In this document: one piece after another, positions 36,201 to 63,726 of the stretch | Layout: each line of letters begins with the position of its first letter | Numbering within the stretch: position 1 is the stretch's first letter | Source of the DNA: Isurus oxyrinchus | Taxonomy: Eukaryota | Direction: 5' to 3' | Assembly (NCBI GenBank): GCA_026770705.1 | Contig: JANJGN010000052.1 | Coordinates: 682,001-746,000, forward strand | DNA: 64,000 bases | Notes under the pieces: model-generated | What the model was told of the DNA's origin: nothing | The model's database searches: none | What the model saw: only the letters and a program-made list of their open reading frames with translations | Program-made: the position numbers and the translations under genes

Positions 36201-36283
36201 TTCAGCCACATTCTTGGCACGCAAAGGGTTAACAGTTTTCTAACTGTGTGAGGCAAAGAGTTGCTTTCTAACTTGGTACTAAC

Positions 36284-36424
36284 CACTTCCTCATTTTGTC
36301 TCACAGTGACACATCAACCCTTTCTAATTAAACACAAATAGGGAGCAGCACAGGAAGAGGTCATTCAGCCCAAGCAGAGCGTGTGGGCAGTTCCTCCCCA
36401 GGCGAGCAGTCGGACAGGTCCTGG
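36284..36424 (+). promoter_or_regulatory. Promoter/exon 1 copy C
   Basis: CACTTCCTCATTTT ETS site and conserved exon ending GG|GTAAGT. Confidence 0.65.
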
Positions 36425-36867
36425 GTAAGTAACGGAACGATTGGAATTCACTTCCACCACCAACACCGTCCTTTGTTGATGTTGTGACTTTATAAAGACA
36501 GATTCCAATGATTGATGCCTTTGAAAGATTTCTACTGATTATTGAGATCTGGGTGTGAGGCTCAAGTCTGTTGTACAGAACATCTTTCTAGCTCAAGGGA
36601 TGAGGGAAGTGCAGGGACATGAGCTTTGGGGTGTCCTGAGCAGGTAAAAGGTGATATAGAAATGCAAGTCCTTCATTGTTTTACTTTCTTAAAGCCTTAT
36701 AACTCTCTGCAGAGCAACTATCATCCCACAGAGAATGAAATTAGTCTGTGAAGACATTGTCTAAAAGCAGTTCCGATCTCTCGAGAGGTGTCGGACAAGA
36801 GGTGAGGTCTCGTTAACTCATTTCTCTTTCACAGCTTGAGAACCAATGAAATACCTGGGAGTGTACA

Positions 36868-36907
36868 ATGATCAGGAAATATTACTTCCTCCTGTCACTT
36901 CTCCAAG
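36868..36907 (+). CDS. Unit C leader exon (MIRKYYFLLSLLQ), no dedicated V exon
   Basis: Acceptor at 36834, phase-1 donor; intron homology to gene A ends at ~38020 and the next promoter follows. Confidence 0.65.
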
Positions 36908-37691
36908 GTAATATCATTGTCAGCTCGGATAGATTTATGGCTAATCACCTTTGTAAAACATAATTCTTATTGAGCTCTGATTGGGAACAGATTCAGCAGT
37001 GAGCCAGTGTACAATCTCACACCAAGTCCCATTCACCCATCACCCCTGTGCTCACTGATATACACTGACTCCCTGTCTGACAGCAGAATTGGAGGAGAGC
37101 AGAGGACTTTGAGGTTTGCATGGTTGGAGGAGAAAGTGATTGGAGAAGAGGAATGGAGGGAATGGAAATTGAGGATGAGAGTCTTAAACTCGAGGCTCTG
37201 CTGGACTGGGAGCCAGTGCAGGTCAGCGAGTGGCAGAGGGTGTGAGGTGTTGAGTCGAGAAACAGTGATAAATACTGGGGGATGAAGTCTATCCTGATGC
37301 TTGGACTCTGATAGCAAAGGAATGAAATTTGTGTCTTTTCCTGATTTTAATCAGAATTTCCCATGAAGACAACACAGCAGCTCCTAGAATAGACAGGCTG
37401 TTCAGTGTCACACTTCCTGTCCATTCTCACCTTGCTAGATACTTCAATAAGGGAGCAAGATAACTGAAAGAGAGAAGGAAGGTAAAGCTGTCCGTGTGTA
37501 AATGGGTCAATATTCAGTTTGTATATTTGTCTTTCTCTCGACACATGCAGAGCTCAGGCTAGAGGCACTTTGTTAGTGTGTTTCACAGTGTCTGCTGGAG
37601 TAGGGTCAGTGCTGAGCTTGGGGACAAGTCAGTCTACAATGCTGCATCGGAATCAACAATACAACAATATGGGGTTTGGATCAGAAATAAT

Positions 37692-39058: not shown

Positions 39059-42000
39059 ATGGTTGGGAAATCTTACTTCCTCCTGTCACTTCTCCAAGGT
39101 AATAACATCGTCAGCTTGGACAGACTTATGGCTAATAGTCTTTGTAAAAGAACATTCTTATGGAGCTCTGATAGGGAACTGATTCAGCAGTGAGTCAGTG
39201 TACAAACTCACACCACGTCCCATTCACCCATCACCCCTGTGCTCACTGATATACATTGACTCCCTGTCTGACAGCAGAACTGCAGGACAGCAGAGACCTC
39301 AAAGGGTTTCAGGGCTGGAGGAGGTGACAGTGATAGGGATTAGAGATGGAGAATGGAGGGATAAGGAATCAATGAAGAGATTTTGAAAATTGAGGCATTG
39401 CTGGACTGGGAGCCAGTGTAGGTCAGTGAGTGACAGGGGAGCGATCGGCTGAATAGAGAAGCAGGGATAAAAACTGGGGGATGAAGTCTATCCTGATGCA
39501 AGCACTCCGATATCAATGCCCTGAAATTTTTCTCTCTTGCTGATTTTCATCAGAATTTCCCATGAAGACAACACAGAAGCTCTTAGATTAGACAGGCAGT
39601 TCAGCGTCACACTTCCTGTCCATTCTCACCATGCTAGAAAATTCGATAAGATAGCAAGATAACTGATAGAGAGAAGGGAGGCAAAGCTGTCTGTATGTAA
39701 AACTGTCAAATATTCTGAGTTATCATGATTGTTTCTGATCTGCTGCAGAGTTTATATTTCATTGAAACTTATCACTTTGCAGCTCAGAGAGAGACCATTG
39801 ACTCACTGCCTGAAAGGGCGGTGGAAGCAGATTCAACAGGAACTTTCAGAAGGGGAACTGGATAAATACTTGAAGGGGACATTTTGCAGGGCTGTGGGGG
39901 AGAGAGCAGAGGTGAGAGTGGGACTAATTGGACAGATCTTTCAAAGGCCCAGCACAGGCTCGATGGGCCAAATGGCTTCCTTCAGTTCCGGATCATTCCA
40001 CAATCCGATAAATTAAATCTCTTATCAGTAACACTTCAGGCTCCCGCTGCAGGAATGGATCTTTGAGAAGGACAGGGAACAAGCGGTTTCTCATATCATG
40101 TTCATATTTATTGACAATTACATAAGTGCATGGAACTGTTGAATATTTGACTCTCTAAAGTGTGGATTTAACCTTCTGGTCCACCCAGATCTTGTGCTGG
40201 TTACCTTGTCTGGAGGTGTCTTTAACTGCTCACAGTGGTCTGTGGGATTGTCACCCTTGGATGTTGTTCCTGATTTCATGTGGGATCTTCTCCTCGATGG
40301 AATAGGAGCGGGAATGGATCTGATTTATCCTCGGTTCCGCCTCACCGCTGTGCCCTTGTGTGTTTGACTCCATAGGCCCTTGGTTCTGAACAAATCCTTG
40401 TCACCTCGGCTGGTGGTCATGAACCTTCTGTGGGATCCTGGATGTGAACTTGTCCCAACTCTAAACTTGGCAACTCTGCACCTCCATTTTTATCATGAAC
40501 ATTCCTTATCTTCTCTTGTAGTTTTAAAAGCTGCCCTCTGGTTTCTGAGAGAGTAGAATGGGTAAGAGTAGCGAAATTGGTCACTACTGGCACACCAAAC
40601 ATGATCTCTGTCAGTGATGGAATAAGGTGAGGTGATGGTGTAGTGGTATTGTTGCTGGATGAGTAATTCAGAGACCCAGGGTAATGTCCTGAGGATATGG
40701 GTTCAAATCCGGCCATAATAGATGATGGAATTTGAATTTAATAAAAATATGAAATTCAAAGTCTAGTGATGACCACAAAACCATTGTTGGAAATCCCACC
40801 TGGTTCACCAGTGCCCTGTAGGGAACAAAATTGTCTGGCCGACATGTGACTCCAGACTCCACGTCAATGTGGTTGACTCTTACATTAGGGATGGGTAATA
40901 AATCCTGGCCTCGCCAGTGACTCCCACATCCCATGAATGAATTTAACAAAGTTGCAGTTGTAGGTGTCGATCTCAGATGTAACATTGCAATGTGTGGATC
41001 TTGCTTGGCCTGTCTACATTTGAGAATTAGGGATTTCACTGTGTGCATCATTCATTCAGCGAGGCTGTTAGATCTGGGGTAATGAGGAGAAGAAGTAGTG
41101 TGATTGATATTCCAGATTATCTGTAATCATGTCCCTAGGTTCACCAAATAATCTGAAAATCGTGCTTAGAGTGTGTGCACCAGTTGTGCTCGGTGTGTTG
41201 TGCTATTTTTGAATAACGGGATATCTGGTAAAGCTGTCGACGATGACGATGAAGTCAGTGACATGGACATGAAAGGATTCAGATGTGATTTTGGACTAAG
41301 AATAGGCAGGAATTTCCTGTGGAATCAGTGGTTCTTTGTGTTGACTTGGCTCATCCTCTTGACAAGCCTCGAACTTCCCTACAACAACTTCAAGGTCATT
41401 GTTCATACCCGGCCAGGGACTGTATCTCTTGTGAGTCTCCTTGTCTGATCTGTGCCCATGTGTGAGGGATGAAGTTGTTGAAGAATATAGGATCACAAAT
41501 GTGCCGGTATGATGCCCTGCCTGCCATTAAAAAAGACTCCCTGGGAGATACCTCGCTTATCTCGATGAGGTCAAGTTGAATCAGGCCACCCTTTCAATGA
41601 TATTTCCACAGTTCCTGCCGAATTTTTCACTGTTCCCTCTTGTAGCTGCTGGCATTTCTCTTGTGCTAAATGTACTGGATCAATTGACAGACTTGCATTC
41701 TCCTGCAGGTGTAATGTTGCAGCTCCCTTGAAACTGACAATACTGTTGAAACTTTCTGCATATTTCAATGTTATGTCCATGAACTGAGTTGCTGGGGTAG
41801 TTTCTGAGTTTGACCCATGTGAGGTCTGACAGATTCCATGGATTGTCTCTAGGGTGAGGTCACCGCATGCCGGTAGACTTGCAATTGCTCAGCCTTTAGT
41901 CTCCACGATGTAGAACATCTGTGACACCCAGGAGGATTGATTGTACTTGCACCCCAGGACTATGGATTCTGCACATGGAGTTGGTGAAGTGTTGTACACA

Positions 42001-45000: not shown

Positions 45001-48000
45001 TTAGATTTAAAACAAATTCAACAAGTTAACACAATGCCCTGGACAGTGGAATTCCAAATGGATTTTCCCCAACTTCAGTTCTGTTGGATAGCAGGCTTGT
45101 GCACAAACAGGGTCCTGAGGACCATGAGCCAATGTAGAATGAACTTGTCCACTCCTGTGTCCAGGATTCTCTTCCATCCGTTATGAAACATTGGGGAGTT
45201 CCATGTGTGTCCTGTAGATGGTCCACACTGCAGCCACTGTGCCCCAGTGATGGAGGGGGTGGATATCGAGTCTAGTGGATCTACAAACCATCCAGAGTTA
45301 AATATTGATATTTCTCTCCCCAGTTGGACTGTCACAAGAGTGGAAAGGTGACACTCCACGAGAGGTGACAGCACAGAAAGGTTCGTGTGTACAGATTCCA
45401 TGTAATTACAATTACCCATCACATTTGTTGGAGAAAACACGTGTTGGAATCTGGAAAATGAGAAGGGACAAATGGCATACATCGTCTATAGCCTTTCACT
45501 CCAAGGATCACAGTCACGAGTTACCACGGTTCCACCATCGGACCCGGCTGTCTGGAGACCTGAAAGATGGTGACTGTTCCCTGATTATAAACAACATCAG
45601 ACGGGAAGATGCAGGACCTTATTTTTTCACGATAAAATTTGGCAATGGTCCGAGCCATAACTATTACCCTGTAACCCAGCTTCACGTTTCTGGTAAGTGC
45701 TGTGTTATAATTACTCAACAATTCACATTCAACACTCAATGGGAAATAATAGTGTTTGATTTGCTTGTTTTTTGGCCGTGTTAACCAGCGTCACTATTTT
45801 TAATGATTTGTCTATTTCTGCTCCCAGATCCATGAGCTTATTGTGTGTGATTGAATCCACATCATAGCTGTAACGTAAACCGAGCTGAGGGGTGATGACA
45901 CCTCCCCGCTGAGTGAAGTATCTCCTCCCCACTACACCTTCCACCCCTCACACTGTCCGTGTAAACCCCTGTCCCATCTCCAGCCTCTCTTTCCCCTCCA
46001 AAGTCCTTGAACGTGTTTCCATCTCCCGAATCCGTTCCCATCTTTCCCGGAACTCCATGTTTGAATCCCTCCAATCAGGTTCCCACCCCAGCCACTGTGC
46101 TGAAACAGCTCTTATCAAGGTCACAAATGGCATCCTGTGTGACTGTGACAAAGGTCAACTTTCCCTCCTCGTCCTTCTCGATCTGTCTGCAGCCTTTGAC
46201 CCGCTCGACCACACCATCCTCCTCCAACCCCTCTCCACTGTCGTCCAGCTGGGTGGGACTGCTCTCCCCTGGCTCCATTCTTATCCATCTCATCGTAGCC
46301 AGAGAATCACTTGCAATGGCTTTGCAGCATCATCTGAACAGTATTAGTTTTCACCTGTCCACTGAGGATCCCCAGCTCTACCTCACCACCACCTCTCTCG
46401 ACTCCTCCACTGCTGCTAAATTATCAGGCTGCTTATCCGACATCCAGTACTGGATGGGCAGAAATTCCCTCCAATTAAATATTGGAAAGACTGAAGCCAT
46501 TGTCTTCATTCCCCACTCCAAACTCTGTTCCCTCGCTACCAACTCCATTCCTCTCCCTGGCAGCTCTCTGAGATTGAAGCCAATCTGTTCACAGCTTTGT
46601 TGTCCCATTTGATCCTGAGATGAGCTTCCGGCCTCATATCTGCGCCCTCACTAACACCGTCTATTTCCACCTCCGTAACATCGTACGACTTCACCCTGTC
46701 TCAGCTCATCTGCTGCTGAAACCCTCATCCACGCCTTCATTACCTCCAGACTCGACTGTTCCAACACACGGTCTACACTCCATAAACTTGAGGCCATCCA
46801 AAACTGCTGACCACGTCCTTACTCACACCAAGTCCCATTCCCTTATCACCCGCTCTGCTCGATGACCGAGACTGGCTCCTGGTCAAGCAAAGTCTCAATG
46901 TCCAAATTTTCATCTTTGTTTCCTCACTATCTCTGTAATCTCCTCCTCCTCCTCCGCCAGCCCCTACAACCCTCCCTATCTCTGTAACTTCTTTCAGTGA
47001 CCAGAAACCACCCCTATCTCAGAACCTTCCTCCAGCTCCAACAACCCTCCCTTTCTCTGCACCATTCTCCAGCCACTCCAACAAACCCTATCTCTAAACC
47101 CCCTTCCAGTCCCTACAGCAATCTCTATCTATGTATCCTCCTCCAGTCCCTACAACCCTCCCTATCTCTATAAACTCCAGTCCCTACAGCCCTCCCTATC
47201 TCTATAATCTCCTCCAGTACCTACATCCCTCCCTATTTCTATAACCTCCTCCAATCCCTACAGACCTCCCTATGTCTATAACCTCCCCCAGTCCTTACAG
47301 CCCTCCCTATCTCTATAACCTCCTACAGTTCCTACAGCCCTCCCTATCTCTATAACCTCCCCCAGTCCTTATAGCACTCTTTCTCACTGTAACCTCCTCC
47401 AATCCCTACAGCCCTCCCTATCTCGATAACCTCCTCCAGTCCCTACATCCCTCCCTATCTTGATAACCTCCTCCAGTACCTACAGCATTCTCTATCTCTG
47501 TAACTTCCTCCAGCCACAACAAACGTCCCTATATCTGTAACCCAATCCTGTACCTACAAACCCCCTATCTCCATAACATTTCCCATTCCCGTCCACCCTC
47601 CCTATCTCTGTTACTATCTTTTGCCCCTAAAGCCTCCCTTTCACTGTAAATTTCTCCAGTCCCTCCAAACCCCCTGTCTCTGTAACCTACTCAGGCCCCT
47701 AAAGCCTCCCTTATCCTTTAACGTCCAACAGTCCCTACAATCCCCTTTTCGCTCAAAGCTCCTCAAGACCCAACAACGTTCCCTAACTCTGTAACCCCAG
47801 CCTGCCCCAACAACCCTTCCTTTCACTGTAAGTTCCACCAGCCCCTCCAACCTTCCCTATATCTGTAACCCCATCCTGCCCCTACAACCCTCCCTGGCTC
47901 TGTAAACTCCTACAGCCCCTCCAATCTTTCCTACCTCTGTAGCCTCACTACAGCCTCTGTACAAAGTACAGCCCCTACAACCCCCCGAGATCACTGCACT

Positions 48001-51000
48001 CCTCCAATTCCGGAATCTTGACCATCACCAGATGCTATCGCTCCAAAATTGGCGGCCGTGCCTTCTGTTGCCTGGGACCCTAAGCTCTGGAATTCCCACC
48101 CAAATCCTCTCCCTATCTCTCTCTCTCTCTGTCTCTTTGTCTCTTTCTCTCTATCTCTCCATAACACCGACCTCTTTTGGTCAGCTGTCGCTAATATCGC
48201 CACATGTGTCTGGGTGACATACTTTGTTTTATGACGCTCCTGTGTAGCACCTTGGGGTGATTGGTCATGTTAAAGTTGTTGTGTAAATATAAGTTGTTGC
48301 CCTTTGACCCTCGACCCCAGATCGAGTCTTATTTTTGAGGGAATGTACAACCTCCTTAGATTTCTGACCAAAATGTCATTTGATTATTTTTATTGAGCGA
48401 ATGCCAAGCCCCGATACCGAGCGAGAGCCTCCTCATTTGCTGAGTTTAAGGTGATGAGTCAGCCCCTTAGTCCGTAGAGGGGATTCTCCTGGGTAATGTG
48501 CAGCCTTGTTTGTGTCTCTCCACAAGCGCATGAGGGGTTTGTACAGAGGCTGCAGCGCTGGAGGGGGTCTGCACAGGGGTCCTGGCCTGTCCTGAGCCAG
48601 TTTTAGCAAGGACTACTCTGGCCTTGGCAGCTGAAAGCCAGCCATTGGACAGACGGGGCCTGTCACAAGGAGCCTGTTAGTCACTCCCCCCCGTGTCTCC
48701 TGTGCTCGGATCCAGACCATGTTGGCTGGTGGATCTGGCTCAGGAAGGGTCCTCCCCATGGGACCCCCAGATGGAAGGTGGGTCGAGCGGGTCATTCACT
48801 TGCATGTTTATTCTGCAGCTTTAATATTTTAAGAAGGTAAGAATGTAGGAACATAAGAAATAGGAACAGGAGCAGGCCATTCGGCCCCTCGAGCCTGCTC
48901 TCGCTGATCTGGTTGTGGCCTTAACTCCATTTTCCTGCCTGTCCCCCAAACCCTTGACTCCCTTGTCGATCAAAAACCTGCCTCACTCAGCCTTGAGTTT
49001 ATTCAATGGCCCAGTCTCCACTGCTCTCTGGGGAAGGGAATTCCACAGGCTAGCGCCCCTCTGAGAGAGGAAATTCCTCCTCATCTCAGTCTTAAATGGG
49101 AAAGCCCTCATTCCGAAACTGTGCTCCCTGGTTCTAGATTCCCCCACGAGGGGGAAACATCCTCCCAGCATCCACCCTGTCAAGCCCCCTCGGAATCGGA
49201 TATGTTTCAATAAGGTCACCACTCATTCTTCTAAACTCCAATGGATACAGGCCCAACCTGCTCAACATTTCCTCACAGGACAAACCCTTTAATCCCAGGA
49301 ATCAGCCCAGTGAAGTTTCTCTGAACTGCCTGTACACAATGATCCTGTTACAATCTCACCAACGCCCTGTGCAGCTGTTGCAAGACTTCCCTCCTTTTAT
49401 ACTCCATCCCTTTGCAATAAAGGCCAACATTCCACTTGCCTTCCTCATTCCGTGGTGTTCCTGAATGCTGACTTTCTGTGATTCATGTACCAGGACACCC
49501 AGATCCCTCTGTACTGCATTCTGCAGCCTCTCTCCATTTTAATAATATTCTGTTTTACTATTCTTCCTGCCAAAATAATTTGTTGCCATTCTCCTCAGTA
49601 TTGACCATCCTCCAAATTCAGCCACATCTGTAAATATCGGGTTCAGTGGATCCACAAACCATCCAGAGTTAAATATTGATATTTCTCTCCCCAGCTGAAC
49701 CCTCACAAGAGTGGAAAGGTGACACTCCACGAGAGGTGACAGCTCAGAAAGGTTCGTGTGTACAGATTCCATGTCATTACAGTTATCCATTGTGTCTGGA
49801 AAACCAACCGCGAGGTGGAGTCTGGTTTAATAATGAGGAATGGAGAACATCGTCTATAGCCTTTCACTCCAAGGATCACAGTCATGAGTTACCACGTTTC
49901 CACCATCGGACCCGGCTGTCTGGAGACCTGAAAGATGGCGACTGTTCCCTGATTATAAACAACATCAGATGGGGAGATGCAGGACCTTATTTTTTCAGAA
50001 TAGAATTTGACAGCGGAAATAGATACAGCTACTATCCTGTAACCCAGCTTCATGTTTCTGGTAAGTGCTGTGTTATAATTACTCAACAATTCACATTCAA
50101 CACTCAATGGGAAATAACACAAACTGTGCCGTTTACATATTAACACAAAACACAGCTTATTATAACACACTGTCTGATTCTCAATAACCTGGTGATAGCT
50201 TCCAGTTCAGTCCTAAAGCAACATCTAATACTCACTTTAATATCAATGATTAAATGTATTGACTGTGTCCATCAGTGTTATCAGGTTATCCACTCGCACC
50301 GATCTCTCTAATCCTGTCTCGAAGTCTGACATATCGATAGAAGAAATATTCACATTTCTATAGCACATTTCACCATCTCAGCATGGACCAAATCACTTCA
50401 CAGCCAATGAGCTGATTCCTGAATTGTAGTTACTGTTGTAAAGTGGGAAACACAGCAGCCAATTTGTGCACAGCAATCTCCCACAAATTGCAAAGTAATA
50501 AATGGCCCAGATTGCTGAGGGACTGATGGGGTAGTGCACTCCAAACTCTGGTCTGCTCCACCACCCTCACCCACTATTATCAGTTCAAGTGTCTCGGAGT
50601 GAACGTGTATTAAGCTGAGAGACAGAAACACCAAAGTCTCAAAGCAGGAAATTCTCTCCTGATCGTTGTAACCTCTCAGTTCTGATATCATCCTTGTAAA
50701 AGTGCTTTCTCTTGTGGGACTGTGATTTCTATTTGAACTGATGCTTCACGTTATATTTCTCTAAAAGGATCCATTCTCTGTCTGTTAGATTTCACAGATA
50801 AACCCACGATATTCCCTGCTGAAATTATTGCAGGAAAGCGTATGGATGTAAGCTGCACCTTCAACACAACGTGCAATGGAACAGCAGCACCTGTCTTAAC
50901 CTGGGACACTCCCACTGACGTACCTGGATCAGTCTCAAACACTGTAACTCAGCATGGTGTCACTCTGACCTATACTTCTGTTCTGACCCTGATCCCATCA

Positions 51001-54000
51001 CTCAAACACCACGGACACACTCTCAGCTGCAGAGTGAGATATCCATCTGTTTCATCGGAGCAGACCCTCGTACTAACTGTGCAATGTAAGTTGAGATATC
51101 CTTCATTCTACATCAGCACTCCCTCAGCGCTGACCCTCTGACAGTGCAGCCTGTTCTCAGTGTCCACATTCTCATTCCTCTCAAAGTGCTTCACAGTCGA
51201 TAGAAATTAACTGATCTTTATTTGATTACTGCTGAATGAAGAGACAAGCTGTCTTAACTTTACACCTCGCACACATTATTTTCCATGGCAACACCTCCTC
51301 CAATCAGTGACCACTTGCCAACCAATCAGCACTCTCTTCCCATCAAGTATAAATTGTTGTTCACTTTCTGTTGGTAAAACTGCGATCTGTCTGTTGAGTC
51401 CTGCCCTGACATCTGAATATCACAATGAACAGAACAAGTTCCAACAATGAGCTGTGGTTGGTGATTCCTTACGTTACATCCGGGGACACTGGAGACTATC
51501 AGTGTGTGGCAGAGAATGAACATGGACCAGTGGATGGGCTCATAACCATCACTGTGGAACGTGAGTGGACACAGACTTCAACATCTCTCTCAGATTGAAT
51601 CATGACACAAACACACACAAATATACAGACCTAAATAGACACCTGCAGACACACAATCCCACATGTATGAGCACACACAATGACACACTCACAAACTAAC
51701 ACACTCAAACACATCTCCCCCGTGGGTTACCTGACCTCCATCAGTGCTGCATCGGAGAGTTGACGTAGATTCTGGGATTTGTGTTCCCATTCATATTTCT
51801 GGAAGAACATGGAAATTGCAAATTCTATTAGACACTCAGATGCACAGAGATACTTACAGATACTGATTGCCTCTCCAACTCTCTCTCTCCCTTGAAGAAT
51901 CTTCTTCAAACCAAACCCTTTGACCAGGCATCTGTCCCAACTCCTCCTTCTGTGAATCTGTGTGAAATATTGTTTGAGTATCTGAGAGTAAGAGAGAGGT
52001 GGAGAGGTTTAGGAAGGGAATTCCTGTTGGTGAAAAGCTTACATCATGTTCCCACCTTTCCAGAGCCCATTTTGCACATGATGTCCAATATCCCTGTTCA
52101 TCATGGGGATTGCCTATGTAAACATCACGCTGTAGTTACACTCTCCTACCAGTGGTGGCACGGTAGCACTTAACCCTTGCATCTCCCAGATTTTCAAGCA
52201 ATTTCACTTCCCAATTTGCTACTACTCACCTCAACCACTCCCTGTGGGAGCGAGTTCCACATTCTCCCCTCTCTCTGGGTAAAGATTGGAACTGTTTATT
52301 AAGCGGGGGGTGTAAGTCCGTGGGGGAGTCCATCTCGATCCTGCCCGATTCGCACACGCGTCCGAGATGGATTTCCATCTTGCACTAAGAAAAGTGTTGA
52401 CGTTTCGAGTCCTCATGACCTCAGTTCTGTCGAAGGGTCATGAGGACTCGAAACATCAACTCTTTTCTTCTCCCCCGAAGCTGCCAGACCTGTTGAGTTA
52501 TTCTTAGCTGATGCTCGCTATCAATAACCAAGAGAGACCGACATTAGAACAAGCTGATTATTTATTGTAACAGAGGGCAGAGCACTAAATCCTTGCCTGC
52601 TCCCACAGCCACCTCCAGCTCTAGACTTACAGTTAACCAGTGGCCCACACTGTCCAGTGATTGGTCAGTACTGTCACATGGTTTATCCACTTGTATTCTC
52701 TTAAAGGTACCTGGCACTCCACATTATCACAGGAGGCCTATAGTACACACATAACAGCATGTTTGCCTCCTCAGCACTGACCCTTCTACAGTGCAGCACT
52801 CCCTCATTACTGACTCTCTAATAGTGTAATGATCCCTCAGTAGTGCTCCTCCAACATTGCACTGGTCAATCAGAACTGACGCTCTGACTGTGCAGTTTTA
52901 TCTCAGCAGTAACCCTCCTACAGTGCAGTGCTCCCACAGTACTGTCCCTCCTACAGTGCAGCACTCCCTCAGGACTGACCCTCTGACAGTGCAGCACTCC
53001 CTCAGTACTGACCCTCTGACAGTGCAGCACGCCCTCAGTACTGACTCTCTGACAGTGCAGCACTCCCTCAGTACTGACCCTCTGACAGTGCAGCACGCCC
53101 TCAATACTGAACTGAAGTGTCTGCCTGGATTACGGGCTATGTGGTGAAAGAACCTACATTGACATCACACCTTTCACATTCTCAGTGTCTTTCAAAGTGC
53201 TTCACAGTCAGTGTAAGTTAACTGATCTGTATTTGTTTTTAGACGCTCCACGGAATCTCTCAATTACTTCTCCAGATATGATTAACGCTTCATCAATCAG
53301 TATAATTGAGTGGAATTCTGCAGTGATAATCTGCTCTGTCGAGAGCTCCCCAGCTTCTAACCTGATGTGGCGACATCTTAATGTCCCAATGAACAGAACA
53401 AGTTCCAACAATGAGCTGTGGTTGGTGATTCCTCATGTTACATCCAGGGACACTGGAGAATATCAGTGTGTGGCAGAGAATGAACATGGAGCAGTGGAGG
53501 GGTTCATAACCATCACTGTGGAATGTGAGTGTACACAGACTTTAAAATTTCTCTCATCTCCAAACACATATACTCAGATGCTCTCCCACACACACACACA
53601 AGCACTCACAAATGTACAGACCCAAAGTGCATGCACACACACAATCCCACACTCATGAGCACACAGAAAGACACACTCACACACTAACACAGTAGTACAC
53701 ACTCCCCTGTGAGTTACCTGACCTCCCTCAGTACTGCACTGGAGAGTTCTCCTGGATTCTGGGATTTGTGTTCCCATTCATATTTATCGAAGAATATCCA
53801 AATTACAAAGTCTATTCCAGAAACTCACATGCACAAAGATTCCAACAGATACTCCCCACCTCTCCGTGTATCTCTCCCCTCCTTTAAGAAGCTTCCTAAT
53901 CCCTCACTCTTGCCTGTCCTAACTCCTCCTTATAATGCCCTGTGTCAAATTTTTTGTGTATCTGAGAGAAAGGGAGCGATAAGGAAGTTTAGGAAGGGAT

Positions 54001-55368
54001 TTCCTGTTAGTGAAAAGCTTACTTCATTTTCTCACCTTTCCAGTGTTCAGTTTTGCCATCATGTCCAATGACCCTATTTATAATGGGGGCATCCTATGTA
54101 AACGTCACACTGTCTTTACATCCTCCCACCAGTGGTGGCACTGTGGTGCTTAACCTTGCACCTCCCAGCTTTTCAGCCAACTTCACTTCACAATTTGCTA
54201 CACATGCTGTAAGGTCATCAAAATTAACTTATATATCAAATGGTAGATTTGATAATACAGTTTATTGAAAGGTTCATCCGCGCTCTGGGAAGGGTTTACA
54301 CTCTCCAGGAAGCAGGAATAGGCTGGATGTTGGGGAGTTCATCTTTTCCCAGAGAGTCGGGATCTTCGGGAATGTGCTGTCAGTGGGTGTGGTGGTTGCT
54401 GTTTCTCTGTTGCCTTCAAGAGGGATCTGGAGTGGTTACTAACTGGGGGAGAGATCATGGAAGCAGAGAATGGTACAGCACAGGAGGAGGCCATTCAGCC
54501 CATTGAGCCTGTGCCAGGTCTTTCAATGTTCTATCCAATCAGATCCACTAACCACCACTCCACTTTGCCCCCATCTTCTTCCTTCAAGTGTTTATCCAAT
54601 TTCCCTTTTGAAAGTTCCTATTGAATCTGCTTCCACCGCCCTTTCAGGCAGCACCTTCCAGATCACAACAACTCGCTCTGTCAAAACAAATTCTCCTCAT
54701 CTCCCCCTCCAGTTGGTCAATCTGTGTCCCTCTGGTTACCGACCCTCCTGCCCCTTAAATACATCGATACTGTTCACCTCAACCACTCCCTGTGGGAGTG
54801 AGTTCCACATTCTCCCCTCTATCTGGGTAAAGATTGGAACTGTTTATTAAGCGGGGGGTGTAACTCCGTGGGGGAGTCCATCTCGATCCTGCCCGATTCG
54901 CACACACGTCCGAGATGGATTTCCACCCTGCACTAAACGTTTCCAGAATTTTCTACAGCACAATCCTGTACACAGCGATGGAGAGAAACATTGGACAGGG
55001 AGTCCAACAGCACAATGATCCATTCTCACCAATGTTCCACGCTAAGGGGAAAGTTCCGATTGTCCACTCTTAGAGTGTTTACAATGAAAACATTCATTCC
55101 ACATTGAATCCCAGTGGATGGGTCAATATTACAGCAAATGTTGCAGTGATATGAAGCTTGATTGTTCAGCCAGAGTGAGAGATTGAAAGCGGAGAGTCAG
55201 TGATGATTTCTTTCTGTGTGTTCTCTAGACAGTGGAGGAGAGATTCTGCACGTGATCCTGATCCTGGGAATACAAGCTGTGATATTCCTTGTGGCTGTGG
55301 TTATCACTATCGCTGGAGTCTGTGTCTGGGAGAGACAAACAGTGAAAGGAAGTCGACAGACTGTTTGA
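39059..55368 (+). CDS. Gene D: Siglec-like receptor with two V-set domains and a short tail; join(39059-39098,45324-45692,49695-50060,50789-51085,53243-53524,55229-55368), ~497 aa
   Basis: All introns phase 1 with AG/GT; no promoter or leader copy between the two V exons; TM followed by 12 residues and a stop. Confidence 0.8.
40100..42940 (-). mobile_element. Degenerate Ty3/Gypsy LTR retrotransposon internal region with a nested SINE (40625-40945, plus)
   Basis: Protease KIDTGAS; integrase HGH..WPGMNNDL..CQE and TTSSPHYPRSNSLAE*MMHTVK. Confidence 0.8.
43392..45230 (-). mobile_element. LTR-like elements upstream of V1
   Basis: TG...CA-bounded segment to ~44646; 44930-45070 is reverse-complement-similar to 19960-20100; partly shared with 62342-63240. 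Confidence 0.45.
45324..45692 (+). CDS. Gene D V1 exon (essential Arg replaced by Thr)
   Basis: KGSCVQIPC, GDCSLII, GPYFFTIKF with ACG at 45629-45631; 369 nt, phase 1-1. Confidence 0.9.
45870..48300 (+). mobile_element. L2-type LINE with an internal ~37-bp CT-rich satellite (~46925-47990)
   Basis: ETALIKVTNGIL..LLVLLDLSAAFD.LDH; DPQLYL; LQLNIGKTEAI. Confidence 0.88.
48850..49590 (-). mobile_element. CR1 LINE 3' end
   Basis: FPLVGESRTREH..FKTEMRRNFLSQR..LWNSLPQ on minus. Confidence 0.88.
49695..50060 (+). CDS. Gene D V2 exon (essential Arg present, extra Cys)
   Basis: AEPSQEW..PCHYSYPLCLEN..GPYFFRIEF with AGA at 49997-49999; 366 nt; near-identical to gene A V. Confidence 0.9.
50789..51085 (+). 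CDS. Gene D C2 (Siglec domain-2 type) exon
   Basis: 297 nt, near-identical to 6487-6783. Confidence 0.9.
51408..51560 (+). pseudogene. 3' half of a C2 repeat exon (5' half and acceptor lost)
   Basis: MNRTSSNNELWLVIP..DYQCVAENEHG with donor; downstream intron duplicated after 53524. Confidence 0.85.
52388..52503. mobile_element. Minimal palindromic Penelope-terminus insertion
   Basis: GTTGACGTTTCGAGTCCTCATGACC ... GGTCATGAGGACTCGAAACATCAAC inverted arms. Confidence 0.7.
53243..53524 (+). CDS. Gene D C2 repeat-type exon
   Basis: 282 nt, phase 1-1, open, both Cys. Confidence 0.85.
55229..55368 (+). CDS. Gene D transmembrane and short-tail exon
   Basis: ttctctag|(Y)SGGEILHVILILGIQAVIFLVAVVITIAGVCVWERQTVKGSRQTV*; phase 1. 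Confidence 0.8.
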
Positions 55369-61900: not shown

Positions 61901-63726
61901 CCGTCTGCTCCCCAGCTCTTTACTTGAGCTCTTTCCCATCACTGTGTCTTCAAAGGTTTCCTGAGCAGTCAGTACACTGCGATTTCAACCCTCTCTGATG
62001 CTGTGTCTCTGTTGTGGTCTGACCAAAGCGTCGAGGGTCGTCTCATGTCATGTAGCTCGATCTCAGGCTGTTCACCATGTCATACCTGTACTGAATCTTG
62101 CTGCCAGAATGTTTGGCCACCGCTGATCACCATGTTGTGTTTTTATAATGATATAAAGGCACCAGCCACTGATACGGAATTGGGTAAATACATTGTGGGT
62201 TGAGTTATTTAGAACAGGGACATGAGAACAGATATACAAGGATAGAAAGCTGGGAGACACCTGCGGCCAAACTGTGTGAGCTGTGTTCTGCTCACAGGCC
62301 AAAGTGAAACTTGGACTGGATGGTGTTATCATCCCAGCTGATGTTACTACTGGGCAAGTCAGATCCCAGGGTGGAACTCAGCTTGATAGGTCCTAACTTT
62401 TATTTTTTATTTAGGAATGTGGAGTGCGGCTACTGAACAGAGTCACAGGAGTCATCTGATGATCTTCTAACAAAAGAATAAAACATTTATTAAACTAGGA
62501 AAGACAAACTATATTACATTACACCTTCACCCAGATCTATACCTTTGCAGATTCATAAGTAGAACACAAGTTACAATAACTATCTTATATTCTCATGTTC
62601 ACACTAAGTGCACAGTCGATATAAACCAATAGACGACCTGTGGTCAGGGACACCACATTCTGAAAGAAACTGACAGAACCCACTTGAAACAAATGCCAAG
62701 TCTCCCTCCTCATCTGACCCCAGACGCTTGTTACACTGTGAGACAACCAGTCTCACTGACTCTCCAAGAACTCGCTTTGGAATCTTCTCCAACATGACAC
62801 ATTCACTCAGACACCTTCCACAAGGGTCCACTTTCACTATTTCAAACTCTCCTTCCCATGTTCCTGCCCCCTGGATCGCCACGTGCATTCAGCCTTCCTT
62901 CCACGCCCTGTCTCTCCAATGCTCAGCCGTGTCAATGGAACACCATGGCTTCACATGGCCGTAGTAATGAGTCACCAACCTGTGGTGTCTCCTAGGATCT
63001 TCTGGCTTCTCACAAGCCTATTTTGATTTAGGCAAAACAAAATCAGCAAGTTAACCCAATGCCCCGGACAGTGGAATTCCAAATGCATTGTCCCCAACTT
63101 CAGTTCTGTTGGAGAGCAGGCTTGTGCACAAACAGGGTCCTGAGGACCATGAACCAATGTAGAATGAACTTTTCCGCTTTTGTGTCCAGGATTCTCTTCC
63201 ATCTGGTGTGATACCTTGTGGAGTTCATTGTGTGTCCTGTAGATGGTCCACACTGCAGCCACTGTGCCCGAGTGATGGAGGGGGTGGATAATGAGTCTTG
63301 TGGATCAACAAAACATCCAGAGTTAAATATTGATATTTCTCTCCCCAGTTGGATTGTCACAAGAGTGGAAAGGTGACACTCCACGAGAGGTGACAGCGCA
63401 GAAAGGTTCGTGTGTACAGATTCCATGTCATTACAGTTATCCATCAGATTTGGTAAAGAAACCACATGTCGGAATCTGGAAAATGAGAAGCTACATACGG
63501 AACAAATGGTCTAAATGGTCTACAGCCTTTCACTCCAAGGATCACAGTCACGAGTTACCACGGTTCCGCCATCGGACCCGGCTGTCTGGAGACCTGAAAG
63601 ATGGCGACTGTTCCCTGATTATAAACAACATCAGACGGGAAGATGCAGGACCTTATTTTTTCACGATAAAATTTGGCAATCGTCCGAGCCATAACTATTA
63701 CCCTGTAACCCAGCTTCAGGTTTCTG
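58917..63726 (+). CDS. Gene E (5' part): join(58917-58956,63349-63726); leader plus Arg-less V1, continues past the window
   Basis: MIGKSYFLLSLLQ plus VGLSQEW..GPYFFTIKF (ACG 63663-63665); introns collinear with gene D. Confidence 0.87.
59960..61900 (-). mobile_element. Degenerate Gypsy element, paralog of 40100-42940, retaining a gag-like N-terminus
   Basis: MSTKFPSLNWDVADRLSEFRMFKQRTELWF (61305-61520); shared blocks with 41680-41800 and 42330-42940. Confidence 0.7.

What the first reader, a model, noticed from the sequence alone, without database searches (positions are those of the whole stretch)
45324..50060. Double-V Siglec: V2 appears re-engineered as an internal domain, with a new Cys placed to bond V1
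Seen: no promoter or leader lies between V1 and V2. V2 starts AEPSQEW, whereas the three other V exons start VGLSQEW (the signal-peptide end). V2 alone has PSHL changed to PLCL, placing a Cys 7 residues after the B-strand Cys; domain 2 has its extra Cys at +6 (CTFNTTC). Known: the first Cys of Siglec V-sets (GSC) bonds that domain-2 Cys, and SIGLEC12 has two V-sets. Inference: V2 gained a BC-loop Cys that pairs with V1's otherwise free Cys, giving a V-V-C2 disulfide chain convergent with SIGLEC12-like tandem V.
Basis: partly seen in the sequence, partly recalled or inferred. Interest (0 to 1): 0.85.

Follow-up and report, generated by a model that had tools for sequence, protein, structure and literature searches.

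The report
Shark Siglec with two disulfide-ready heads
A shark immune-receptor gene of the Siglec family carries two sugar-binding "head" exons in a row, and the second head has an extra cysteine found across sharks and rays only in non-first heads, which suggests (unproven) that stacked heads are stapled together by disulfide bonds.

Summary
Gene D has the exon order leader (39059-39098), V1 (45324-45692), V2 (49695-50060), C2 (50789-51085). All exons are phase 1 and in frame, and no leader-like exon lies between V1 and V2. Among the four V exons in the window, only V2 starts AEPSQEW and reads PLCL, which puts a Cys 7 residues after the B-strand Cys.

The Cys was not invented in this gene. 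It marks non-first V domains in predicted Siglec-like proteins of ten shark and ray species: 27 of 35 internal V domains have it, against 0 of 112 first V domains, and 33 of 35 internal domains carry some fourth Cys. An AEPS-like start occurs in 13 of 34 internal domains and 0 of 110 first domains, so it is typical of internal domains but not required.

Contigs from one probable RNA run join a V-exon 3' end to the AEPS start. Three runs also join a V1-type exon directly to C2, so V2 inclusion may be optional or specific to some paralogues.

AlphaFold models of natural homologues stack V on V roughly as V stacks on C2 in Siglec crystal structures. No coordinates were returned, so the disulfide remains an inference. 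I found no paper describing this. First-stage notes of this scan report the same Cys pattern at two other loci of this genome.

The parts
39059..39098 (+). Leader (signal peptide) exon of gene D. It encodes MVGKSYFLLSLLQ plus one G (phase 1), followed by donor GTAATA.
   Evidence: It matches the N-termini of shark homologues (MIGKSYFLLSLLQ).
45324..45692 (+). V1, the first V-set exon (369 nt, phase 1 to phase 1). It starts (V)GLSQEW, has three Cys (GSC, IPC, DCS) and PSHL with no loop Cys. It reads YFFT, so it lacks the sialic-acid Arg.
   Evidence: Pfam V-set 1.5e-12 and Ig_CD22.
45386..45388 (+). Codon of the first Cys of V1 (GSC), the proposed disulfide donor at the membrane-proximal end of V1.
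   Evidence: Sequence. It is equivalent to the Siglec V-set Cys that bonds domain 2 (PMC10122656; alignment to Siglec-5).
45693..49694 (+). V1-V2 intron (4.0 kb). It holds a LINE-type reverse-transcriptase fragment (about 45913-46609), a degenerate tandem repeat (46922-47955) and other repeats. It holds no leader-like exon.
49695..50060 (+). V2, the second V-set exon (366 nt, phase 1 to phase 1). It starts (A)EPSQEW, has four Cys and keeps YFFR, the essential Arg.
   Evidence: Pfam V-set and Ig_CD22. Best PDB sequence matches are Siglec-5, CD33 and sialoadhesin. dN/dS against V_A is 0.18.
49793..49795 (+). TGT codon of the extra B-C loop Cys (PLCL), at B-strand Cys +7. This is the proposed acceptor for the first Cys of V1.
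   Evidence: The position is Cys in 27/35 internal and 0/112 first V domains of homologues.
50789..51085 (+). First C2-set exon, (D)FTDKPTIF...VSCTFNTTC.... The acceptor Cys codon is 50872-50874.
   Evidence: Pfam C2-set_2. Aligns to MAG and CD33 domain 2. The splice acceptor at 50789 is seen in contigs.
53243..53524 (+). Second C2/I-set exon ((Y)APRNLSITSP...ITITVE).
55229..55368 (+). Transmembrane exon with a short tail and the stop codon (SGGEILHVILILGIQAVIFLVAVVITIAGVCVWERQTVKGSRQTV*). It has no ITIM and no Lys or Arg in the membrane span.
   Evidence: The same tail ends the Scyliorhinus torazame protein P0006.
5262..5627 (+). V exon of gene A, the only V exon found between gene A's leader exon (1648) and its C2 exon. 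It is a natural recombinant. Its upstream flank and 5' part through PSHL are V1-type. Everything from ENQP onwards, including the downstream flank, is V2-type. The switch lies between 5363 and 5367. It has no loop Cys.
63349..63726 (+). First V exon of gene E. It is V1-type (YFFT) and 86-88% identical to V1 of gene D at the protein level. The rest of gene E lies beyond the window.

Best explanation
Gene D is a Siglec-type receptor gene of a shark. Its closest relatives among annotated proteins are from the lamniform sharks Carcharodon and Cetorhinus. Two V-set exons lie in tandem behind a single leader exon. V2 belongs to an old class of internal V exons found in elasmobranch Siglec-like genes. 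That class carries one extra Cys in the B-C loop, at the end of the domain that faces the preceding domain.

In known Siglecs, the first V-set Cys, at the foot of strand B, forms a disulfide with a B-C loop Cys of the C2 domain below it. I propose that the same donor-acceptor bond is repeated here. The GSC Cys of V1 bonds the PLCL Cys of V2, and the GSC Cys of V2 bonds the CTFNTTC Cys of C2. The result would be a covalently stapled V-V-C2 stack. V2 keeps the sialic-acid arginine, and the distal V1 lacks it.

Shown: the exon anatomy, the positional Cys rule, purifying selection on V2, Siglec membership, and a V-to-AEPS-V2 splice junction in one run's contigs. Inferred: the disulfide itself, and how often V2 is included in the mRNA of this gene.
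For: There is one leader per gene and none between V1 and V2.

Positional rule: Cys at B-strand Cys +7 occurs in 27/35 unique non-first V domains and 0/112 first V domains (Fisher 1e-22, not corrected for phylogeny). Of the internal domains, 33/35 have a fourth Cys, whereas 97/112 first domains have exactly three. The rule holds in ten species, including the rays Hypanus and Mobula.

In lamniform sequences, V segments are mosaics shared between positions, yet the Cys always follows position. Examples are P0170 (single V, PSHL) against P0196 V2 (PSCL), and window V_A against V2, which are about 92-93% identical pairs. On the V-domain tree the Cys state needs at least 6 changes.

V_A is a V1/V2 recombinant whose breakpoint falls just after PSHL. 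This sole V domain therefore carries the first-type start and no Cys on a V2-type body.

V2 is under purifying selection (dN/dS 0.18 against V_A, dS 0.22).

RNA-type contigs: three X1 contigs carry TTCACGTTTCT immediately before 49694. That is the 3' end of a V exon (as in V1_D) joined to the AEPS start. The X1 contigs listed as covering the loop (6) read T>C at 49791 (Ser, giving PSCL), and no change of the Cys codon appears among the differences shown. X1 also has a joint from a V2-type end to a V1-type start.

Known chemistry: a V-C2 interdomain disulfide, Siglec-6 Cys46-Cys172 (PMC10122656).

Geometry: in the AlphaFold model of the natural V-V-C2 homologue P0003 (pLDDT 84.6, pTM 0.66), the V2-C2 pair superposes on CD33 and Siglec-10 V-C2 at Z 19-20, rmsd 2.7 A over 204-209 residues. 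In the model of the V-V protein P0004, the V1-V2 pair superposes on Siglec-10, CD33 and Siglec-5 V-C2 at rmsd 4.8-5.9 A over 197-209 residues. The Fab and scFv rows that span both domains in the same list give about 14-17 A.
Against: No coordinates were returned, so no S-S distance was measured. The two-chain V1+V2 complex test gave no verdict (ipSAE 0.02).

Eight of 35 internal V domains lack the +7 Cys. Two of them have only three Cys (P0001 V2, P0163 V2). Ray V2 and V4 place their fourth Cys after strand C instead.

The homologues are mostly automatic gene predictions, so 'internal' means genomic order and not proven mRNA order.

A GT..AG joint 45691->50788 (V1-type exon directly to C2) occurs in X1, X3 and X12. 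V2 can therefore be skipped, or single-V paralogues cross-map at the 90% likeness used.

No run held more than 44% of V1's sampled words, and all runs were only guessed to be RNA. The junction contigs may come from a paralogue or a related species. The V-to-V2 junction rests on 11-letter overhangs.

The association is partly inflated by shared ancestry; the independent-pairs test had too few pairs.
Confidence: 0.6

Rival explanations
1. V1 and V2 are alternative heads, used as cassette or mutually exclusive exons. Mature receptors would then carry one V domain on the C2 stalk, and the tandem reading would be mostly an artefact of gene prediction. The extra Cys would have another role or none.
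For: A V1-type exon is spliced directly to the C2 acceptor at 50789 in contigs of three runs from three studies. One is a 972-nt X12 contig that runs from upstream of V through a V1-like exon into C2 and beyond. An earlier first-stage note reads gene E as a possible alternative-V receptor (s1-863597). NCBI lists several isoforms for these genes in other sharks.
Against: X1 contigs join a V exon end to the AEPS start of V2, and a V2-type end to a V1-type start, so tandem V-V transcripts exist. If V2 were only ever the first domain, the strict absence of the loop Cys from 112 first V domains and its presence in 27/35 internal ones would be unexplained. The V part of the X12 contig differs from V1 at 29 positions and 10 gaps, so it probably comes from a single-V paralogue or another species.
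Confidence: 0.15
2. The tandem V-V protein is made, but the extra Cys of V2 does not bond V1. It forms an intermolecular disulfide (a covalent dimer), or it stays free or is modified, and the first Cys of V1 is unpaired.
For: The bond was not observed. The complex prediction gave no support. Some internal V domains lack the Cys or carry a fourth Cys elsewhere. This shows that a stack can exist without a +7 acceptor.
Against: A dimerisation Cys has no reason to be excluded from first V domains. Cys counts fit one acceptor per added domain. The Cys lies in the same loop as the known C2 acceptor (+7 against +6). The predicted V-on-V geometry resembles V-on-C2.
Confidence: 0.13
3. V1 of gene D is a decaying or non-functional exon that has lost the sialic-acid Arg. 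The working receptor would be leader-V2-C2, with AEPS as the mature N-terminus. The Cys would be an inherited relic of an internal-type exon.
For: V1_D and V_E read YFFT where every homologous first V domain reads FR or FK. dN/dS between V1_D and V_E is 0.63, with changes clustered in the loops.
Against: V1 has an intact frame and consensus splice sites. It is shared with gene E at dS 0.09 with no stop codon. V1-type 3' ends are present in spliced contigs: X3 record 24 shows 4 differences in 120 nt. Carcharodon P0178 has a closely similar first V domain followed by a PSCL V2.
Confidence: 0.08

Closest known systems
Mammalian Siglec V-set/C2-set pair with its interdomain disulfide (CD33, Siglec-5, Siglec-6, Siglec-10, MAG)
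   Same: The V-set Cys pattern is the same (first Cys at the foot of strand B, plus a B-E intrasheet pair). The F-strand Arg lies in YFFR. The C2 domain has a B-C loop Cys at +6. The model of the homologue's V2-C2 pair fits CD33 and Siglec-10 at Z 19-20, rmsd 2.7 A. The V-C2 disulfide is documented (PMC10122656).
   Different: Here a second V-set domain sits on top, and the acceptor Cys has been placed in the B-C loop of a V-set domain (+7) instead of a C2 domain. The distal V lacks the Arg.
Primate SIGLEC12 (Siglec-XII), the Siglec with two V-set domains
   Same: Two tandem V-set domains lie ahead of the C2 domains (PMC6288428). One V domain lacks the essential Arg in the human protein.
   Different: The duplication is probably independent, arising in a cartilaginous-fish family that also has 3-, 4- and up to 7-V genes. 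Whether V2 of SIGLEC12 carries an acceptor Cys was not checked here. NCBI's name 'Siglec-12' for the shark proteins reflects similarity, not orthology.
NCBI-predicted multi-V 'sialic acid-binding Ig-like lectin 12/13' proteins of sharks and rays (for example Carcharodon carcharias P0178, Mustelus asterias P0003/P0005, Scyliorhinus P0001/P0155, Hypanus sabinus P0002)
   Same: They share the leader, the V-V(-V)-C2 layout, the AEPSQEW and P[SL]CL internal V domains, and the CTFNTTC C2 domain. The first V of P0178 has the same LLEKTRVGIW.MRRDKW loop as V1 of gene D.
   Different: They are automatic predictions with no described function. V1 of gene D has lost the Arg (YFFT). Gene D ends in a short uncharged TM tail, where P0178 has a long tail with Tyr motifs.

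Membership tests
Siglec (I-type lectin) family | V-set Ig domain with the Siglec Cys pattern: an extra Cys at the start of strand B plus a B-E intrasheet pair | tested here: met
   Both V1 and V2 have GSCVQIPC...DCSL. Pfam V-set and Ig_CD22 hit above cut-off. The best PDB sequence hits are Siglec-5, CD33, sialoadhesin, Siglec-8, -10, -7 and MAG.
Siglec (I-type lectin) family | Essential arginine on strand F (YFFR) for sialic-acid binding | tested here: met
   V2 reads YFFRIEF, aligned to YFFRVE of Siglec-5. V1 reads YFFT, so this feature is not met for V1.
Siglec (I-type lectin) family | C2-set second domain with a B-C loop Cys that receives the V-set Cys | tested here: met
   VSCTFNTTC aligns to VSCMVPDNC of MAG domain 2. 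Pfam C2-set_2. The bond itself was not observed.
Siglec (I-type lectin) family | Two-domain V-C2 fold and geometry as in solved Siglecs | tested here: met
   The test used the natural homologue P0003, not the window's joined protein. CD33 gives Z 19.8, rmsd 2.7 A over 204 residues. Siglec-10 gives Z 19.3, rmsd 2.7 A over 209 residues.
Siglec (I-type lectin) family | Binding of sialylated glycans | not testable with these tools
   This needs recombinant V1-V2-C2-Fc on glycan arrays.
Elasmobranch multi-V Siglec-like receptors (annotation-level group) | Two or more V-set exons in tandem behind one leader and ahead of the CTFNTTC C2 exon | tested here: met
   Homologues with 2 to 4 complete V domains.
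Elasmobranch multi-V Siglec-like receptors (annotation-level group) | Non-first V domains carry a Cys at B-strand Cys +7 (P[SL]CL) | tested here: met
   V2 reads PLCL. The rule is 27/35 against 0/112.
Elasmobranch multi-V Siglec-like receptors (annotation-level group) | Both V domains present in one mRNA | tested here: inconclusive
   A junction from a V end to the AEPS-V2 start appears in 3 X1 contigs. A V1-type-to-C2 joint also appears in 3 runs. The runs are not proven to be RNA, nor to come from this locus.
SIGLEC12 orthology | Descent from the mammalian SIGLEC12 duplication | not tested
   No mammalian sequences were compared. Multi-V genes with varied V numbers in sharks and rays suggest lineage-specific exon duplication.

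The most novel reading that the evidence does not exclude
Cartilaginous fishes have turned the single Siglec V-C2 interdomain disulfide into a repeatable donor-acceptor module. Every V exon brings a donor Cys at its foot, and every non-first V exon brings an acceptor Cys in its B-C loop. Exon duplication or alternative exon inclusion then yields covalently stapled stacks of 2 to 7 lectin heads. In gene D the stack is capped by an Arg-less, fast-evolving distal V domain over a canonical sialic-acid-binding V domain.
Probability: 0.5. Interest if true: 0.72.

Novelty: new variant of a known kind. Interest (0 to 1): 0.6.

Why it matters
Siglecs are studied almost entirely in mammals, where one V-set head sits on a C2 stalk and is tied to it by a single interdomain disulfide. 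Suppose sharks and rays build multi-head Siglecs whose heads are linked by the same bond, with a dedicated acceptor Cys that appears only in non-first V exons. That would be a simple sequence rule that makes Ig-domain exon duplication structurally safe. It would also describe a new receptor architecture, rigid poly-lectin rods with a non-canonical distal head. The idea is directly testable with Cys mutants, non-reducing mass spectrometry or a structure. It also bears on how SIGLEC12-type double-V receptors fold, and on the design of stacked V-domain biologics.

Tried and rejected
1. Complex prediction with V1 and V2 as separate chains gave ipSAE 0.02, no verdict. It counts neither for nor against.
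2. I checked whether the AlphaFold models are exposed as coordinates, so that the Cys-Cys distance could be measured. They are not. I used only indirect rigid-body comparisons.
4. A word search across the V-V junction of P0003, looking for transcript-derived (Logan) V-V proteins, returned only genome-based NCBI or UniRef predictions.
5. A first, hydrophobicity-based search for the leader exon gave only false candidates. The leader was then found from homologue N-termini.
6. The independent-pairs test on the V-domain tree had too few supported pairs to reach significance.
Exons were searched one by one by reference, and the folds used natural database homologues.
8. I rejected the idea that the loop Cys pairs with V2's own first Cys. 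The two lie at opposite ends of strand B, 12 residues apart. This is inference from Ig topology and the strand assignment.
9. I rejected the idea that the repeated 5' regions are transposons. They are the promoter-leader regions of the paralogues.


Full report
**What is there**

The window is a cluster of paralogous Siglec-type receptor genes from a shark. A translated search with the two exons of the finding detects four V-set exons on the + strand: 5262-5627 (gene A), 45324-45692 (V1, gene D), 49695-50060 (V2, gene D) and 63349-63726 (gene E). All four have a ...ctctccccag acceptor and a G|gtaagt donor and lie in phase 1. A V1-to-V2 splice therefore reads ...QLHVS-AEPSQEW in frame. The first residue of each exon (V or A) is a split codon completed by the last G of the preceding exon.

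Pfam calls both V1 and V2 V-set plus Ig_CD22, and calls the next exon C2-set_2. The best sequence matches among solved structures are Siglec-5, CD33, sialoadhesin, Siglec-8, -10, -7 and MAG. GSCVQIPC aligns to GLCVLVPC of Siglec-5, and YFFRIE aligns to YFFRVE. The C2 exon's VSCTFNTTC aligns to VSCMVPDNC of MAG.

**Gene model of gene D**

- Leader: 39059-39098, MVGKSYFLLSLLQ plus G.
- V1: 45324-45692.
- V2: 49695-50060.
- First C2 exon: 50789-51085.
- Second C2/I-set exon: 53243-53524.
- TM exon with short tail and stop: 55229-55368.

Leader exons of the same type lie at 1648 (gene A) and 58917 (gene E), with a diverged extra copy at about 36868. None lies between V1 and V2, by peptide pattern or by blastn-short. 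The 4-kb V1-V2 intron is filled with a LINE reverse-transcriptase fragment, a degenerate tandem repeat and other repeats. Homology between the two V units extends only about 60 nt on either side of the exons.

V2 alone starts (A)EPSQEW, from CTGAACCC where the others have TTGGACTG. V2 alone reads YPLCL where the others read YPSHL or YPSDL, which puts a Cys 7 residues after the B-strand Cys (IPC). The C2 domain has its extra Cys at +6. V1 of gene D and the V exon of gene E read YFFT, so they lack the sialic-acid arginine. V2 and the gene A V exon keep YFFR.

**The Cys is a family-wide positional rule**

An exhaustive HMMER search with V2, followed by a word-index search, returned NCBI-predicted 'sialic acid-binding Ig-like lectin 12/13/10' proteins of many sharks and rays. 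Several have two to four complete V-set domains.

I cut all high-scoring, full-length V domains out of 258 proteins, giving 147 unique domains.
- Cys at B-strand Cys +7: 27 of 35 non-first V domains and 0 of 112 first V domains (Fisher 1e-22, not corrected for relatedness).
- A fourth Cys of any kind: 33 of 35 non-first domains, whereas 97 of 112 first domains have exactly three Cys.
- An E[PLQ]S-type start (AEPSQEW and variants): 13 of 34 internal domains and 0 of 110 first domains. Carcharodon internal V domains start VGLSQEW and still carry PSCL, so the start motif is typical but not required.

The rule holds in ten species, including the rays Hypanus sabinus and Mobula hypostoma. So V2 was not re-engineered in this gene. 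It belongs to an old internal-V exon type.

**Evidence that the Cys is selected and not just inherited**

On a tree of the V domains, which is short and poorly resolved, the Cys state needs at least six changes. The window's sequences group with Carcharodon and Cetorhinus.

Within this lamniform set the V exons are mosaics. The C-C' and F-G segments occur in both positions, yet the Cys follows position without exception. The clearest cases are two near-identical pairs. Carcharodon P0170 (single V, PSHL) pairs with P0196 V2 (PSCL). The window's gene A V exon (PSHL) pairs with V2 of gene D (PLCL, 92-93% identical at the protein level).

Site-by-site typing shows that the gene A exon is a recombinant. 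It is V1-type from its upstream flank through the PSHL codons, up to 5363. It is V2-type from 5367 through its downstream flank. The only V exon found between gene A's leader and its C2 exon thus combines a V2-type binding body with the first-position start and no loop Cys.

V2 is under purifying selection (dN/dS 0.18 against the gene A exon, at dS 0.22). V1 against the gene E exon gives 0.63, with replacements clustered in the B-C and C-C' loops.

**RNA-level evidence (one call, contigs only, 90% likeness)**

No run held more than 44% of V1's sampled words, and the runs are only guessed to be RNA. The contigs laid may come from paralogues or a related species. Within that limit, one search shows the following.
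- Three X1 contigs begin with TTCACGTTTCT immediately before 49694. That is the 3' end of a V exon (identical to that of V1 of gene D) joined to the AEPS start of V2.
- The X1 contigs listed as covering the loop (6) read T>C at 49791, giving the canonical PSCL. No change of the Cys codon appears among the differences shown.
- One X1 joint links a V2-type 3' end to a V1-type start.
- A GT..AG joint 45691->50788 (V1-type exon directly to the C2 exon) occurs in X1, X3 and X12. In X12 it lies on a 972-nt contig whose V part differs from V1 at 29 positions and 10 gaps, so that contig probably comes from a single-V paralogue or another species.

Tandem V-V transcripts therefore exist in this family. 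V2 skipping in gene D is neither shown nor excluded.

**Geometry**

In Ig topology, the first V-set Cys sits just before strand B, at the membrane-proximal end of the domain. The B-C loop sits at the N-terminal end. In the AlphaFold model of the natural V-V-C2 homologue P0003, strand B of V2 is 171-177, the first Cys is residue 170 and the loop Cys is residue 182. The V2 loop Cys therefore faces V1, just as the C2 loop Cys faces the V domain above it. The V-C2 disulfide is documented for Siglecs, for example Siglec-6 Cys46-Cys172 (PMC10122656).

The P0003 model has pLDDT 84.6 and pTM 0.66. Its V2-C2 pair superposes on CD33 and Siglec-10 V-C2 crystal structures at Z 19-20, rmsd 2.7 A over 204-209 residues.

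A model of the V-V-TM protein P0004 (V domains at pLDDT 80-95) superposes its V1-V2 pair on Siglec-10, CD33 and Siglec-5 V-C2 at rmsd 4.8-5.9 A over 197-209 residues. The Fab and scFv rows that span both domains in the same list give about 14-17 A. The predicted V-on-V stacking therefore resembles V-on-C2.

The two-chain complex test gave no verdict.

**Exceptions and limits**

Eight internal V domains lack the +7 Cys. Two of them have only three Cys (P0001 V2, P0163 V2). Ray V2 and V4 carry their fourth Cys after strand C instead.

Nearly all homologues are automatic predictions. 'Internal' therefore means genomic exon order. That is enough for the positional rule but not for protein architecture.

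The V exons of gene E beyond the window could not be read. An earlier first-stage note says that gene E has three V exons.

**Comparison and novelty**

This is a member of the Siglec family by V-set Cys pattern, F-strand Arg (V2), C2 acceptor Cys and fold. It resembles primate SIGLEC12 in having two V-sets (PMC6288428), but it is most likely an independent, lineage-specific exon duplication.

Full-text searches found no paper on shark or ray multi-V Siglecs or on a V-V disulfide. The multi-V layout is already present in automatic annotation. First-stage notes of this scan saw the same Cys pattern at two other loci of this genome (s1-865473 and s1-871258), and a follow-up confirmed a seven-V gene (s1-865389).

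I rate it a new variant of a known kind. The positional Cys rule is well supported, while the disulfide and the inclusion of V2 in this gene's mRNA remain inferred.

Noticed in passing
window 5262-5627 (with flanks 5043-6815): The gene A V exon is a V1/V2 recombinant. Its upstream flank and 5' part through PSHL are V1-type. The rest, including about 1.2 kb of downstream intron, is V2-type (homologous to 49634-51117). This suggests unequal crossing-over or gene conversion between the two V units of a two-V ancestor.
   Followed up: yes
window 45324-45692 and 63349-63726: V1 of gene D and the first V of gene E read YFFT where every homologous first V domain has YFFR or YFFK. They therefore lack the canonical sialic-acid arginine. 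Their differences from each other cluster in the B-C and C-C' loops (dN/dS 0.63).
   Followed up: partly
window 36855-36939: There is a fourth, diverged leader-like exon (MIRKYYFLLSLLQ plus G|gtaat) with its 5' region (36235-37515). It lies 2.2 kb upstream of gene D's leader. It may be a duplicated promoter-leader, an alternative first exon, or a remnant of a lost gene.
   Followed up: no
window 51410-51560: Between the first and second C2 exons of gene D lies the second half of a C2/I-set exon (HLNITMNRTSSNNELWLVIPYVTSGDTGDYQCVAENEHG...ITITVE, with donor GTGAGT). The first half is not in the same open frame, so this is probably a decayed exon copy.
   Followed up: no
window 7068-15600: Gene A carries about nine tandem copies of the C2/I-set exon unit. 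The exon-end motif ATCACTGTGGAA recurs at 7083, 8033, 8998, 10026, 11083, 12171, 13430, 14497 and 15585. This gives a very long repetitive stalk, interrupted by an N run at 14517-14983.
   Followed up: no
window 55229-55368: The last exon of gene D encodes a TM segment with Gln and no Lys or Arg, then a 14-residue tail (ERQTVKGSRQTV*) with no ITIM. The same ending occurs in Scyliorhinus torazame P0006.
   Followed up: partly
window 49791 (run X1): Six X1 contigs covering the V2 loop read C where the window has T (Leu to Ser, PLCL to PSCL). The Leu of this window is therefore a private or paralogue-specific variant of the conserved PSCL motif. Mustelus P0151 V2 also reads PLCL.
   Followed up: partly
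window 45913-46609 and 46922-47955: The V1-V2 intron holds a LINE-type reverse-transcriptase ORF fragment (LLVLLDLSAAFD...) and about 1 kb of degenerate tandem repeat made of roughly 75-nt C-rich units. Both show very high contig depth in all four runs.
   Followed up: no
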